From Saccostrea echinata (lineage: Eukaryota), in the NCBI RefSeq assembly GCF_033153115.1, contig NW_026889806.1:6882001-6946000 (forward strand): DNA of 64,000 nt, read 5' to 3'. Made by a program: the position numbers and the translations under genes. The notes under the pieces are model-generated. The model saw nothing but the letters and a program-made list of their open reading frames with translations. It did no database searches and had not been told where the DNA came from. Of the stretch, positions 799-58,000 are shown one piece after another (the first letter of the stretch is position 1; each line of letters starts with the position of its first letter).

Positions 799-3700
799 AT
801 GGAGGACACCTCAGAGAAGACTTGTCTCCTCTCAGAGTATGAGCCGAATCACAACCCCCAGATCACAGTAGACGTGCCACAGGGGGATGCCTCGAGGGAA
901 ATGGCCCGGAACAAACGACGGAATCTCCAGAGCTCAGTGACAGTCCTGGAATCAGTGGAGGTTCCCAATAATTCCCAGGATTACGTGTCCCACAGCTATA
1001 ACAGTTCACAGGGTGAAGAGCTCCCTGACAGATTAAAAATCTCGTACGTACAATCTATAACAGTTCACAGGGCGAGGAGCTCCCCGACAGATTAAAAATC
1101 TCGTATGTAAAATTAATAACAGTTCACAGGGAGAAGAGCTCCACAACAAACTTAAAATCTCGTATGTACAATATATAATAGTTCACAGAGAGACAAGCTC
1201 CCCGACAGACTCAAAATCTTCTATGTAAAATTAATAACAGTTTACAGGGAGTCAAGCTCCCAGACAGACTCAAAATCTCATATGTACAATCTATAAGAGA
1301 TCTTAGGTAGTAGATCTCCCCGACAGATTCAAAATCGTGTATGTATGATCTAAAAGAGTTAACAGGGAGAAAAAGCTCCCCAACAGATTCAAAATCTCGT
1401 ATGTATGATCTAAAAGAGTTAACAGGGAGAAAAGCTCCCCGACAGACTTAAAATCTTGTATGTACGATCTAAAAACAGTTAACAGGAGAGAAAGCTCCCA
1501 GACAAACTCAAAATCTTGTGTGTACAATCTCTTGATATACACACAAAATATGTTAGAGAAATTCATGTTCCATATATATGTGCATTAATGTATGTTTAAA
1601 TCAAAGTTTTGGGGCTGGAATTAAAATTTCAATTATTTCCCAATTTTGACTCAGAAGTTTGAGTTGTGGATATGTAGAAAACTGTTTTTTCTGGCTTAAT
1701 AATAGTTTTTTAAAGGAATCATTATGTATTGCATGCGTAGTTTTGCAGCCGTAAAATTTTAGGAAACTAAGATAAAATTCTATTCACATGATAGAAATAA
1801 AATTTCATCGAGGTGGGGTGAATTTTCTGAATCTGTCAGTGAAATGCAAACTAGGAAGTCACTGGAGTACAGTAAGAATAATGAAATGAAGATCAATTTG
1901 TTGGAAAAAATAGAATAGCTTACTGCAGCCAAATTTTACTTTAGTGAAAAGGAAGAAACTTTCTGACATTCTAGTAATTCGTAGTGAGAATTTAACATAT
2001 TGAGGAAAAATAAGAAATAAAAGTAAACTTTAAATACTGATAACATGTTATCTTAATATTAAAAATATGGATGAAGGTAAATTATGTTACACAATATTGT
2101 TTACACCCTTTTTAATTCATATTTTTAACAATTTTGTAGTTTTTAGTTCTTGTATGATTTATTCCAGGAATTTACAAAGTCTGATGCACCTTTTGAAGGG
2201 TAACATTGGGACAGGAATTCTGGCCATGCCGATAGCGGTCAGCTATGCTGGACTTTGGGTAAGGATTTAGGGGTCAAGGGTAATATTGGGACAGGAATTC
2301 TGGCCATGCCGATAGCAGTCAGCTATGCTGGACTGTGGGTAAGGATTTATTGGTCAAGAGTAATATTGGGACGGGAAGAAATTCTGAACAAGCCAATAGT
2401 GGTCAGGTATACTGGACTGAGGTTAAGGATCAAGGGTAATATTGGGATGGGGATTCTGATTATGCCGATAGTGGTCAGCTTTGCAAGACTCTGGGTAAGG
2501 ATTAAAGGGTCAGTGTATGTTAACCTATACTTAGGTAACCTGTCAAGTCAAAGTTAATATTCTTTAATTTCACTTTATATCATTAAAAGAGCATTTTGGT
2601 TTGGAGATGAGTTCCTATGATGGAAAGGAGAAGATATTTAATGTGAGACTGAATAAATGACTGGAGAGTTTAATATCCCTAACATTGTTAGGTTTGCTGA
2701 CTTTGTATTTGGACAATGACTTCTTGACCTCCTGGTTACTAGTAATGCTACTTCTTAAGCTTAATGTCTCAATGGCCCTATTACAAATCACAGTTTGTGT
2801 ACGTTATTTTAAAGTCATCGGTTAATTTCCAGATACGTATATCAATGGAGCCTCCCCCCCCCCCCCCCCCCCAATTTTTTGGATAGTCAGTATGTTGTCA
2901 GCTTGATACCTACTTCATTGTAACTTATTAACTAATCAACCACCACACAATGATCACATAGGAAATGAGCTCTTGGCTTCATGAGTTGTTACGCACAAAT
3001 GTGTATGTCTTAAACATATTGATCCCGACTGAATGTCATACATTTATGACTGGAATGAAATATAAACCAGGGACTCTGCATCAAAAGTCAGGTGCTCTAA
3101 CCACTAAGCTACCCAGACCAAAATCTGAGTCTTATATATAGCTTAATCCACTACACATCATACTGGTTTTTATTATGACTTCAATACCACCTAAATTCTT
3201 CCAATATCAGTTACTGTATCATGTCTAACAATTTTTTTGAGTTAAATCTCGGAGCATCCTATGATGAACATGTCATTACCCTCTTTATTGCTCCACGTGT
3301 GAAGCATACTGATGGTGTATCATTAGTTAAAATGACTCTTAAGTGGGCAGTAAGTAGATATACAGAGTAAATGATATGCATATATTTCTGTCTTCAAAAT
3401 TTAACTACAGTAAAATCTCGTAATCTCAAACTTGATGACTAATTTAACATATGCCGGACTCTGAGGACATATGCCCAAGGGCACCTTGCTTTGATATAAA
3501 TTTATTACATTTTTAACAGTGAAATACCGTAATTTATCTAGTGAATAAAATGTGATATTTTTAAAGGTTTTATTTTTCATAATGAAAATAACAAGTTTAC
3601 AGAAAAGTACTCTCTTTTTCTTCCCTTTAGGAAAGTCTCAATATAGGTAGTGAAATAAACCATCCTGACTAAAAAAGCCAAGTTTCTCCAAATTGTTTTA

Positions 3701-55000: not shown

Positions 55001-58000
55001 TACAAAACAATAACAGAGATATATACAGTAGCCATTCTTCTTACGTCATATTGCTACAAAACAATAACAGACATATATACAGTAGCCATTCTTCTTACGT
55101 CATATTGCTACAAAACAATAACAGAGATATATACAGTAGCCATTCTTCTTACGTCATATTGCTACAAAACAATAACAGAGATCCTACCCTATGATGAGTT
55201 CCCACCTGTTCCTTTATGATTCTGTGATATTTATTCCATGGGCTAATTTATTAATGGTCTCATCATGCCCTTTTCCATGCACATAATGCTTATCACGAGC
55301 AACAATATTAATGGCTCTATCCTGTCCTATAATGTGCTCATCCAGTCCCTTCCTATGAAGCTTACCAGCAGCAACAGTATTAATGGCCCTATCCTGCTCT
55401 ATGCTGTGTTTATTAATGGCCCTACCCCAGGGATCGACATTAACGGTTGTCCGATTGCCCGGGACAAGCAAATTCTCAGTTCGGGCAAGTGAAACTGTCG
55501 ACTTCCTTGTCCGATCGGGCAAGTAAATGTTTCTCCTAGAAATATACATATTCTTTTTAGTTTACATTGATTTATAAATAAAAAGATAAATTCAACAGTT
55601 GATTTCCGCTAGGGACCTGACTGACATTGAATTGCATTCAGAATTCCTTGCTTAAATATCGGGTTCGTTATTCATTTTTCTTTCGTTTGTTTATTGTTTA
55701 ACGTCCCTCTCGAGAATTTTTCACTCATATGGAGACGCCACCACTTGGTGGTGGAGAGCTGCAAATTTTGACCTATACTCGGCACTCAGGGCCATTGAGC
55801 AGTGAGGGATCTTTTTCGTGCCAGCACCTACTGCGACACGGGGCCTCAGTTTATATGGTCTCATCTGAAGGACCAGTCTCCACGTCCCATAGTGGGATTC
55901 GAACCCGCGACGTAAGGATCAACTCCTTACTCCACGACTCTAGAGCAAACGCTCTAATCACTGCGCCAGGCGGGCGACCATTTTTCTTTCATGGTAAATA
56001 CGCCCTACGTCTAACAACTATGATAACTTCATATTTAGAAATTAGATTATTTATTCACTCAAAGAATATAAGTAACACAATGTATCCCGATCAAGATGTG
56101 TATGTTTCGTAGCAACTATCTTCCTTTGGCGTTGCTTCAAAATTATCTTTGAAAATCACGATTCACAAAAAGATCCTACTGAAATTAATATTTTGAAAAT
56201 ATGAATTTTATTAAAAGGAAACAGGGTTATTGCTGCATGGCAGTGTGTACGTGTTAAAAGGTTAAATTGACATTGACAGTGGTACACATGTATGTACAAA
56301 ACGCAGCATTGAAATTTTTTTCATGTAGTTCAACTTGCCAAGTATACAGTAGTGTATTTGGTTACACTTTTTTTAATCATAACATTTAAAGTAATAAATA
56401 ATTTTTTCTCCAAATTTGGGGCAACCAAGTTTTGCATTCGGACAAGTCAAAGTTTGAGATGACTTGTCCAAAGGACAAGTCAACCTGAAAGTTAATGTCT
56501 ATCCCTGTACCCTGCTCTATGCTGTGTTTATTACTGGCCCTATCCTGCTCTATGCTGTGTTTATTAATGGCCCTATCCTGCTCTATGCTGTGTTTATTAA
56601 TGGCCCTATCCTGCTCTATGCTGTATTTATTAATGTTTATTAATGGCCCTATCCTGCTCTATGCTATGTTTATTAATGGCCCTATCCTGCTCTATGCTAT
56701 GTTTATTAATGGCCCTATCCTGCTCTATGCTGTGTTTATTAATGACCCTACCCTGCTCTATGCTGTGTTTATTACTGACCCTACCCTACTCTATGCTGTG
56801 TTTATTAATGGCCCTACCCTGCTCTATGCTGTGTTTATTAATGGCCCTACCCTGCTCTATGCTGTGTTTATTAAAGGCCCTATCCTACTCTATGCTGTGT
56901 TTATTAATGGCCCTACCCTGCTCTATGCTGTGTTTATTACTGGCCCTACCCTGCTCTATGCTGTGTTTATTAATGGCCCTACCCTGCTCTATGCTGTGTT
57001 TATTAATGGCCCTATCCTGCTCTATGCTGTGTTTATTAATGACCCTATCCTGCTCTATGCTGTGTTTATTAATGGCCCTATCCTGCTCTATGCTGTGTTT
57101 ATTAATTGCCCTATCCTGCTCTATGCTGTGTTTATTAATGGCCCTATCCTGTTCTATGCTGTGTTTATTAATGGCCCTATCCTGCCCTATGCTGTGTTAA
57201 CTCAATCCCTAGGATGCTTACCAGCAGCTACAATATTAATGGCCCCATCCTGCCCTATGATGTGCTCCCTCAATCTCTGTTCTAGGGGGAACTTTCTTCT
57301 CTCTTCTGCAGCCCTCTTCTCTTTCAATTCCAAAAACTAAACAAAAAAACCACATTGTATGAAAATAAATAGTGACAGTATAATTCAAAACCTCAATATA
57401 ATATACGAGGGGTGATCAAAAAGTTCGCGAACTAATTGAATTACTTCCTTAAAAGAAATGATATGAGGTTTCAGTGTTTATTATTTTTTAAAACAGTCCT
57501 CTCCAATTTTTAATGCACATCTGCCATTGTTCTGCCCATGTGCGAATCACGTGATCAAGGTGGTCACGTGACATGCTTCGTAGCAGTCTGTTCACATAAG
57601 CTAAAAAATTTCCGAGTCTTATATTTCTTACCATGCAAGTTATTTTTTATAACAAGAACAGTCCATCTGTCAGAAATTGCCAAATCTCAGCAACAGGATA
57701 GGTAGATAAGGATATTCCTTCCCAGAATTAACATGGTGACCATAACAACCCGAGACCTCTGTCTTGGGAGCGTCGTTTTTTAAATGTGGATAAAGTATGG
57801 ACACATTCTCTTTATCATATCTCATATGTTTAAAGTGTAAATTAAATGATATTTCAGGGATTTAATAATTGCATTATTGTTAAGATATTCAACTATTTTT
57901 CTAATCGTAACTTGGCGATGTTTTATAACAAATTGCTCAACTACGGACACATCTTTTCCCCGGCTTGCTTTTGTTGGGCAACAGAACAAACATTATTTTT

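What the first reader, a model, noticed from the sequence alone, without database searches (positions are those of the whole stretch)
997..57270. Recurrent exon-boundary-anchored tandem arrays ('splice-site echoes') in four unrelated genes
Seen: 13 arrays of unrelated sequence share one architecture. The unit is 10-65 nt of a coding-exon end plus the boundary signal and a short stretch of adjacent non-coding DNA. One terminal copy is the functional junction and the rest run into the intron or UTR. Donor arrays: SLC36 (1044, 2259, 13289), FBXL (23012), USP38 (34905, 39083, 40882) and CLPB (57222, 54436, 52967, 49912). There is one acceptor array (CLPB 54513) and one stop-codon array (USP38 43526). 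That is 11 of the 37 coding introns of the five complete genes, with an 11:1 donor:acceptor bias, whereas non-TE arrays away from junctions are few. Inference: a process preferentially creates or retains duplications at exon 3' ends (e.g. transcription/splicing-coupled breaks, R-loops, methylation or nucleosome boundaries), and the spliceosome must reject many near-identical downstream donors. I do not know of a named system for this, but I cannot search the literature.
Basis: partly seen in the sequence, partly recalled or inferred. Interest (0 to 1): 0.92.

Follow-up and report, generated by a model that had tools for sequence, protein, structure and literature searches.

The report
Splice-junction minisatellites ("mirages") in an oyster
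Many introns in this bivalve genome begin with tandem copies of their own exon end and splice donor; single cases are known in amphioxus ("mirages") and in a few human genes, but here they are so common that they point to an unexplained bias acting at exon 3' ends.

Summary
The window holds 13 locus-specific minisatellites (10.6 kb, 16.5% of it) built from an exon end plus its boundary signal. Ten span a splice donor. One is made of exon sequence just upstream of a donor, one spans an acceptor and one spans a stop codon. Protein homology fixes the exon ends. RNA-type contigs from three runs join only the authentic, exon-adjacent sites of CLPB.

Chance cannot explain it: 10 of about 17 non-TE arrays span a donor (binomial p about 1e-10). 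A random 200-kb sample of the same genome gave three more donor arrays and one acceptor array. Genome-wide, periodic donor motifs are 6.5-7 times commoner than their reversed controls, and an acceptor motif is not enriched. Other first-stage readers noted the same thing on other pieces of this genome.

These match amphioxus "mirage" minisatellites and the human F7, IFI6, CBS, LMNB2 and PDGFA boundary VNTRs, where the most upstream donor is used.

What looks new is the taxon, the scale (thousands of arrays by extrapolation) and the donor bias. The cause of the 40-100-fold excess at donors is unresolved.

The parts
996..1530 (+). Donor array behind SLC36-like exon 1. Unit 59 nt x 9 (48 nt of exon + 11 nt of intron). 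Authentic GT at 1044-1045.
   Evidence: The exon 1 to exon 2 frame is continuous (sequence read). The N-terminus has no Pfam hit, so this exon end rests on frame logic only.
2196..2512 (+). Donor array behind SLC36-like exon 2. Unit 80 nt x 4 (62 exon + 18 intron). Authentic GT at 2259-2260.
   Evidence: The Aa_trans profile match (positions 5-35) ends at the exon end.
13278..13862 (+). Donor array behind the SLC36-like exon that ends at 13288. Unit 27 nt x 22 (11 exon + 16 intron).
   Evidence: The neighbouring exons cover Aa_trans positions 212-269 and 329-409, which leaves this exon to fill the gap.
19996..23002 (-). FBXL intron made almost wholly of derivatives of the exon end and donor: 37-nt units (22571-23002 and 21963-22114), a 23-nt x 76 satellite (20139-21899) and 35-nt units (19996-20159). 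The exon ends at 23012.
   Evidence: F-box and LRR Pfam hits on the flanking exons. That the 23- and 35-nt units derive from the exon end is inferred from shared sequence strings, not tested statistically.
34875..37539 (+). Donor array behind USP38 exon 1. Unit 43 nt x 62 (30 exon + 13 intron). It makes up 79% of the 3.4-kb intron 1.
   Evidence: tblastn of P0001 ends at 34904/34907. The unit occurs nowhere else in the 923-Mb genome.
39037..39567 (+). Donor array behind USP38 exon 3. Unit 59 nt x 9 (45 exon + 14 intron). GT at 39083-39084.
40840..41537 (+). Compound donor array behind USP38 exon 5. Units of 19 nt (3 exon + 16 intron) and 55 nt (39 exon + 16 intron). The exon ends at 40881.
   Evidence: P0001 residue 496 maps to 40881 and residue 497 to 41916.
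43473..43618 (+). Weak array (61 nt x 2.4, 76% identity) that copies the last ~50 coding nt of USP38, the stop codon and 8 nt of the 3' UTR.
   Evidence: The last exon, 43366-43526, ends in TGA.
49603..49934 (-). Donor array behind the CLPB exon that ends at 49912. Unit 47 nt x 7 (24 exon + 23 intron).
   Evidence: ClpB_D2-small positions 22-53 fall on this exon.
52673..53028 (-). Donor array behind the CLPB Walker-B exon that ends at 52967. Unit 114 nt x 3.1 (54 exon + 60 intron). The unit is in frame, and the decoys keep the peptide.
53985..54458 (-). Donor array behind the 78-nt CLPB Walker-A exon (54436-54513). Unit 28 nt x 17 (17 exon + 11 intron).
   Evidence: The RNA-contig joint 53773|54436 skips the whole array.
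54490..55182 (-). Acceptor array in front of the same exon. Unit 54 nt x 12.8 at 98% identity (about 30 nt of intron with its AG + 24 nt of exon). The copy nearest the exon is the one used.
   Evidence: RNA-contig joint 54513|57222. The unit is unique to this locus.
56511..57198 (-). Array (33 nt x 20.5) derived from the exon that ends at 57222. It copies exon bases 13-43 nt upstream of the donor and lacks the donor itself.
55181..55422 (-). Older, degenerate copies of the same exon end deep in the intron. One of them (55360-55408) spans the donor.

Best explanation
These are 'mirage'-type minisatellites. Each array began as a small local tandem duplication (19-114 bp) that happened to span the 3' boundary of a coding exon, either a splice donor or, once, the stop codon. 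Such a duplication does no harm. The copy joined to the exon keeps the reading frame, and the splicing machinery uses the most upstream donor, so every further copy lies inside the intron and is removed with it. The two-copy state then expands and contracts like any minisatellite, by unequal exchange or slippage. The results are arrays of 3-62 units that can make up most of an intron.

Duplications across acceptors are rarer because an upstream spare acceptor tends to be used and breaks the message.

What is shown and what is inferred:
- Shown: the anatomy, the local origin of the units, use of the authentic sites, the enrichment and the donor bias.
- Inferred: the founding event, the mode of expansion and the reason for the acceptor deficit.
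- Open: the 40-100-fold excess at real donors over ordinary intron sequence means something extra favours exon ends. I think a mutational bias is more likely than selection for the arrays, but neither was tested.
For: Anatomy:
- The units are exon end + GT + 11-60 nt of intron, phased on the true junction.
- The units of the two arrays tested (34875-37539 and 54490-55182) occur only at their own locus in 923 Mb, and every junction array's unit matches its own adjacent exon end. They are not carried by transposons.

Splicing:
- The authentic junctions are fixed by homology.
- Spliced contigs from three runs use only the exon-adjacent sites.
- Decoy donors are intact in 157 of 170 units and mostly as close to the U1 consensus as the real donor.
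- Use of a decoy would give a frameshift or early stop in 11 of 12 arrays.

Enrichment:
- Window: p about 1e-10. Random 200-kb sample: 3 donor arrays and 1 acceptor array among about 13 non-TE arrays, p about 7e-4.
- Genome-wide: AGGTAAG x3 gives 1834 matches against 282 for the reversed control; CAGGTAA x3 gives 2429 against 341; acceptor-like TTTCAGG x3 gives 179 against 339.
- The donor motif alone does not seed arrays. None of the non-exon sites among the 91 donor-like sites outside arrays (roughly 70) carries one.

Array behaviour:
- The donor sits at no preferred position within the unit (exon fraction 0.16-0.81, mean 0.57).
- There is no identity gradient away from the exon, as expected for ordinary minisatellite turnover.
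- Exon-part differences are 36% synonymous. My arithmetic gives 37% if the decoys drift freely and the live exon accepts only synonymous change.

Precedent: amphioxus mirages and the human boundary VNTRs behave the same way (PMC3087553, PMC3902484, PMC1557585).
Against: - A tolerance filter alone does not explain why intron-internal minisatellites are so much rarer per site than donor-spanning ones.
- In five arrays the decoy nearest the exon differs from it by 12 synonymous and 0 non-synonymous changes. That is more conservative than neutral drift of decoys predicts. It may point to gene conversion from the live exon or some other constraint.
- Copy-number polymorphism, a hallmark of minisatellites, was not tested.
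- The reads were Logan contigs, which drop rare isoforms, so low-level decoy use cannot be excluded.
- Raw long reads were not examined, so the exact copy numbers rest on the assembly.
Confidence: 0.8

Rival explanations
1. Uniform mutation plus filter only. Small tandem duplications arise evenly along genes. Purifying selection removes those inside exons and across acceptors. What is left merely looks concentrated at donors.
For: - The stop-codon array and the near-uniform position of the donor within units fit a picture in which anything spanning a terminating signal is tolerated.
- The acceptor deficit fits selection.
Against: - Introns are the largest neutral target. With the null restricted to intron plus junction space, 10 of 17 arrays spanning donors still gives p about 4e-10.
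- The background rate is about 0.05 arrays per kb, against 0.1-0.25 per donor.
Confidence: 0.07
2. Selected function. Arrays of strong U1-binding sites, or of CAG|GT recursive-splice-like sites, are kept because they help expression. They might suppress premature polyadenylation in AT-rich introns, strengthen exon definition, or allow stepwise intron removal.
For: - Decoy GT is retained in 92% of units and T(+2) is almost invariant, slightly better than the average column.
- Several units carry a pyrimidine-rich stretch before CAG|GT.
- The proximal decoys show 12 synonymous and 0 non-synonymous changes in five arrays.
Against: - Units share ancestry, so the retention counts are not independent.
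- The array 56511-57198 has no donor at all.
- The acceptor and stop-codon arrays do not fit a U1 role.
- Arrays appear young and lineage-specific: the contigs of organism C that were listed (only the longest are shown) match only the exons.
- No recursive joints appear in the contigs.
Confidence: 0.08
3. Intron birth. The arrays are the source of the introns, through tandem duplication of an AGGT-containing exon segment (the Rogers model, 'intron-breeding' arrays).
For: The model is discussed for amphioxus mirages (PMC3087553). Arrays make up to 79% of an intron.
Against: - The acceptors of array-bearing introns lie outside the donor arrays, in unrelated sequence. The joint 53773|54436 ends about 210 nt beyond the array, and the USP38 intron 1 acceptor lies about 750 nt beyond its array.
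- Other unrelated repeats lie in the same introns.
Confidence: 0.03
4. Assembly artefact. Long-read assemblers mis-expanded short repeats.
For: No raw reads were laid on the arrays.
Against: - The units carry structured, nested substitution patterns and higher-order periods.
- The phenomenon recurs across contigs.
- The equivalent amphioxus arrays were reported as re-sequenced or reconstructed from trace data (PMC3087553, PMC3902484).
Confidence: 0.02

Closest known systems
Amphioxus 'mirage' minisatellites (Adh3, troponin C, globins BflGb6/9, PGBD5; Canestro et al. 2002 as cited in PMC3087553 and PMC3902484)
   Same: - Minisatellite-like tandem duplications whose unit spans an intron/exon boundary.
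- Units of 10-160 bp, many of which keep the AG/GT signals.
- Both 5' and 3' boundaries can be involved.
- Normal splicing is undisturbed.
- Suspected to be a general feature of the genome.
   Different: - Described gene by gene in a cephalochordate. The papers I could reach give no genome-wide count and no donor bias.
- Here the host is a bivalve, about a quarter of the introns in the window are affected, donors outnumber acceptors about 10:1, and arrays reach 62 units and 2.7 kb.
- Length instability, shown for Adh3, was not tested here.
Human exon-boundary VNTRs: F7 IVS7 (37 bp), IFI6/6-16, CBS IVS13, LMNB2, PDGFA intron 4 (PMC1557585)
   Same: The first monomer spans the exon-intron boundary. 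Identical pseudo-donors follow. The most upstream site is the one used (sometimes the first two or three).
   Different: These are isolated cases in a genome of about 200,000 introns. The mechanism of site choice was tested experimentally there, whereas here it is inferred from contigs.
Intron gain by tandem duplication (Rogers model; intron-breeding arrays in human genes), as discussed in PMC3087553
   Same: Tandem duplication of a segment that carries splice signals.
   Different: In that model both intron ends lie in matching repeats and the intron is new. Here only the 5' end lies in the array.
Helentron-borne satellite-like arrays of oysters (PMC7492417)
   Same: Dispersed short tandem arrays in a bivalve genome. 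Related ~146-166-bp arrays are present in this window and in the sample.
   Different: Those units are shared among many loci and travel on mobile elements. The junction arrays are each unique and copy their own exon.

Membership tests
[quoted passage not shown] | Head-to-tail repeat of a 10-160-bp unit | tested here: met
   TRF periods 19-114 nt, 2.4-62 copies.
[quoted passage not shown] | The unit contains exon sequence, the splice signal and adjacent intron sequence, and one copy is the real junction | tested here: met
   with exon ends fixed. One exception: the 56511-57198 unit lacks the donor.
[quoted passage not shown] | Regular splicing is not disturbed | tested here: met
   Spliced contigs of three runs join only the authentic CLPB sites. 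Not tested for the other genes. Contigs can miss rare isoforms.
[quoted passage not shown] | Either boundary (5' or 3') can be duplicated | tested here: met
   Acceptor arrays at 54490-55182 and L009:8344-9094.
[quoted passage not shown] | Length instability or allelic copy-number variation | not tested
   Only contigs were available.
F7-type boundary VNTR with upstream-donor choice | The authentic donor is followed by pseudo-donors of the same sequence, and only the most upstream is used | tested here: met
   GT intact in 157 of 170 decoys, with U1 match mostly equal to the real site. The joint 53773|54436 uses the first donor of 17.
Intron-breeding tandem arrays / Rogers duplication model | Both intron boundaries lie in matching repeat units | tested here: not met
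   The acceptors lie outside the donor arrays. The intron 57221-54514 has arrays at both ends, but they belong to unrelated families.
Transposon-borne satellite-like arrays (Helentron type) | The same unit is found at many loci | tested here: not met
   Units of two arrays hit only their own locus in 923 Mb.
Recursive splice sites | A pyrimidine tract + AG directly followed by a GTAAGT-like donor, used stepwise | tested here: inconclusive
   CAG|GT is present in most units. No intermediate joints appear in the contigs, but contigs cannot show transient intermediates.

The most novel reading that the evidence does not exclude
This bivalve, and perhaps other highly polymorphic marine invertebrates such as amphioxus, has a mutational process tied to the act of transcription or splicing, or to exon-marked chromatin. 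It produces small tandem duplications specifically at exon 3' ends. The process seeds thousands of donor arrays and measurably lengthens introns.
Probability: 0.3. Interest if true: 0.85.

Novelty: new member of a known kind. Interest (0 to 1): 0.62.

Why it matters
If donor-spanning minisatellites really affect a large share of introns, three things follow.

1. The genome becomes a natural library of hundreds to thousands of experiments in 5' splice-site choice: identical donors in series, with only the first one used.
2. These arrays are a quantitatively important route of intron growth. They make up 16.5% of this window and 79% of USP38 intron 1.
3. The 40-100-fold excess at true donors over donor-like sequence elsewhere may mean that DNA breakage or repair is coupled to exon ends. 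That link can be tested by pedigree or population long-read sequencing.

There is also a practical side. These arrays will mislead gene predictors with spare splice sites and ghost exons, and they will hamper short-read mapping in oysters.

Tried and rejected
Tests that gave a negative or null result:
- Purging of decoy donors: rejected. GT is kept in 92% of decoys.
- Proximal-to-distal decay gradient, as expected if the live junction is re-copied repeatedly: not seen. Spearman rho has mixed signs.
- Motif-driven origin, in which any CAGGTAA-like site seeds arrays: rejected. None of the non-exon donor-like sites outside arrays carries one.
- Transposon origin of the junction arrays: rejected.
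- Intron birth by duplication: rejected, because the acceptors lie outside the arrays.

Steps that could not be done:
- The founding 'mirage' paper (PMC117041) is not held.
- A search of earlier findings for the word 'mirage' found nothing.
- Searches for papers on bivalve or genome-wide boundary minisatellites found none.
- I did not look systematically for microhomology at unit borders. Inspection of the 34875 array by eye showed none.
Exons were searched one by one, by reference.
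Full report
**What is in the sequence**

I printed them in phase with their period. Each array starts inside a coding exon, runs through a GT donor and 11-60 nt of intron, and then repeats.

The unit structures, written as exon nt + intron nt:
- SLC36-like gene: 48+11, 62+18 and 11+16.
- FBXL: 24+13.
- USP38: 30+13 (62 copies, 2.7 kb), 45+14, and 3+16 nested with 39+16.
- CLPB: 24+23, 54+60 and 17+11.

One array (54490-55182, 54 nt x 12.8, 98% identity) instead carries a pyrimidine tract, an AG and the first 24 nt of a CLPB exon. One weak array (43473-43618) copies the end of the USP38 coding sequence with its stop codon.

Its unit copies exon bases 13-43 nt upstream of the donor and lacks the donor. 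Older copies that do span the donor lie 1.8 kb into the same intron.

Together the arrays cover about 10.6 kb, or 16.5% of the window.

**Are the exon ends real?**

- SLC36-like exons match successive parts of the Pfam Aa_trans profile, and the match ends at the array's first unit.
- The CLPB exons align residue by residue with human CLPB structures. Consecutive exons abut at residues 236/237, and the alignments stop at ...GSSGIG and ...LQLFDE, exactly where the arrays begin. ClpB_D2-small covers the 49912 exon.
- For USP38, a search of protein representatives gave a 969-aa orthologue (P0001). tblastn places its residues 1-314, 312-348, 358-396, 403-464, 461-496 and 497-910 on six exons whose ends match the arrays. 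A seventh exon ends at the stop.
- FBXL has F-box and LRR hits.

I searched exons one by one by reference and did not build or search a joined spliced model.

Contigs of three RNA-like public runs were laid on 52500-57400. They join 54513|57222, 53773|54436, 53598|53717 and 53125|53552, all with minus-strand GT..AG ends, and leave the arrays uncovered. The exon-adjacent donor and the exon-adjacent acceptor are therefore the ones used. All laid data were contigs, so rare decoy use cannot be excluded.

**Is it more than chance?**

The window has about 17 non-transposon minisatellites. Ten span a donor, where about 0.5-0.7 are expected if founding units fell at random. This holds even when the null is restricted to intron-plus-junction space, to allow for purging inside exons (p 1e-11 to 4e-10).

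I drew 20 random 10-kb stretches from four contigs of the same 923-Mb genome. Among about 13 non-transposon arrays there were:
- three donor arrays: L008 on an Amidohydro_2 exon (confirmed by Pfam), L019 on a Rho-like exon, and L014;
- one acceptor array (L009);
- one array strictly inside an intron.

A genome-wide pattern search with a built-in reversed-pattern control gave these counts:

| Motif, three copies spaced 12-42 nt | Matches | Reversed control |
|---|---|---|
| AGGTAAG (donor) | 1834 | 282 |
| CAGGTAA (donor) | 2429 | 341 |
| TTTCAGG (acceptor-like) | 179 | 339 |

These are counts of matches, not of loci. Even so, the listings show about 16-19 separate loci per 44-51 Mb for each exact 7-mer.

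By my extrapolation the genome holds thousands of donor arrays, with wide error. Other first-stage readers reported the same motif on many other pieces of this genome. I treated those notes as leads only.

**What kind of thing is it?**

- The units of the two arrays I tested occur only at their own locus. The other tandem families in the window, with periods of about 107-166 nt, recur in the random sample and look transposon-borne.
- The donor motif by itself is not enough. Ninety-one donor-like sites (at least 7 of 9 matches to CAGGTAAGT) lie outside arrays, and none of the non-exon ones among them carries an array.
- The donor sits anywhere within the unit (exon fraction 0.16-0.81, mean 0.57).
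- Identity to the live copy shows no consistent decline with distance. So the arrays were not built by repeated re-copying of the junction. They behave like ordinary minisatellites after one founding duplication.
- Decoy donors are not being eliminated. GT is intact in 157 of 170 decoys, and most decoys match the U1 consensus as well as the authentic site.
- Use of a decoy would shift the frame or meet a stop within 1-87 nt in 11 of 12 arrays. The exception is the in-frame 114-nt CLPB unit.
- Differences between decoys and the live exon are 36% synonymous, against 23% expected if only the decoys mutate (p = 0.001). My arithmetic gives 37% if decoys drift and the exon accepts only synonymous change.
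- In five arrays the nearest decoy shows 12 synonymous and no non-synonymous differences. That is more conservative than this model predicts and remains unexplained.

**Comparison with what is known**

The literature search found a named precedent. [quoted passage not shown] They were later seen in amphioxus troponin C, globins and PGBD5. They occur at both 5' and 3' boundaries, have no effect on splicing, are unstable in length, and were suggested to be general in cephalochordates (PMC3087553, PMC3902484). The original paper is not held.

In humans, minisatellites whose first monomer spans a donor are known in F7, IFI6, CBS, LMNB2 and PDGFA. Experiments on F7 showed that the most upstream of identical donors is chosen (PMC1557585).

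The arrays here meet every defining feature of mirages that I could test. Length polymorphism was not tested. They do not meet the definition of intron-breeding arrays, because the acceptors lie outside the repeats. They are also not transposon satellites.

I found no paper that reports the phenomenon in molluscs or quantifies it genome-wide. The library does not hold most subscription journals, so this absence is weak evidence.

**Mechanism and verdict**

The best-supported reading has three steps:
1. A small tandem duplication that spans an exon's terminating signal is harmless, because the first donor or first stop is the one used.
2. The duplication then expands as a minisatellite.
3. Duplications across acceptors are mostly purged, which gives the donor bias.

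This explains the anatomy but not the frequency. Per site, real donors carry arrays roughly 40-100 times more often than ordinary intron sequence. A further bias must exist, either in mutation (breakage or repair coupled to exon ends) or in retention. Nothing available here separates the two.

- Cross-species comparison was blocked.
- The genome sample was capped at 200 kb.
- Contigs of a more distant organism matched only the exons at 90% identity. That is weak evidence that the arrays are lineage-specific.

The finding is real and striking in scale. It is a new member of a known kind rather than a new category.

Noticed in passing
window 52673-53028, 2196-2512, 996-1530, 34875-34960, 39037-39160: In five arrays the decoy copy nearest the exon differs from the live exon only at synonymous positions (12 synonymous, 0 non-synonymous). 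The 114-nt CLPB unit is also in frame and open. This is more conservative than free drift of intronic copies predicts. Gene conversion from the exon and origin from a diverged allele are both possible.
   Followed up: partly
window 55616-55943: A stretch in a CLPB intron has contig depth in the thousands to hundreds of thousands in all four runs, including other organisms. It is a very high-copy dispersed repeat, and some ORF pieces there look like eroded coding sequence.
   Followed up: no
window 9270-10081, 11504-12505; L009:4837-5386; L011:1869-3352: Arrays of about 157-166 bp with a shared unit recur in the window and in the random sample. They resemble the Helentron-carried satellite-like repeats described for Crassostrea (PMC7492417). 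Families of ~146-156 bp recur as well (window 16112-16499 and 59134-59531; L003, L013, L019), and the 107/143-bp array at window 51220-52144 shares its unit with the 146-bp arrays in L009 and L017.
   Followed up: no
window 25427-25618 and 26400-26459: Arrays of a palindromic 21-nt unit (AACGCGAAACTTTCGCGAATA) sit in opposite orientation about 800 nt apart. This looks like subterminal repeats of a small mobile element.
   Followed up: no
window 62885-63527 (- strand): Open reading frames resemble a Tc1/mariner-type transposase fragment.
   Followed up: no
window 29300-31197 (+): A beta-tubulin gene carries no junction arrays. Paralogues at 72-85% identity lie on contigs C47, C2, C14 and C30.
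   Followed up: no
window 44980-45928: The largest non-junction, non-transposon array (59/119 nt x 16, 72-85% identity) lies about 1.4 kb downstream of the USP38 stop. I did not establish whether it is 3' UTR or intergenic.
   Followed up: no
L014:2589-2922: A 64-nt x 5 array fills most of a ~400-nt intron. It starts 23 nt after the donor and ends 45 nt before the acceptor, and it includes neither. This is an example of a strictly intron-internal minisatellite.
   Followed up: partly
L020:2771-3385: A 30-nt x 19 array has a unit ending in TTTGCAG|G, which looks like an acceptor. A possible 42-nt exon follows it. It could be a second acceptor array, but there is no coding evidence.
   Followed up: no
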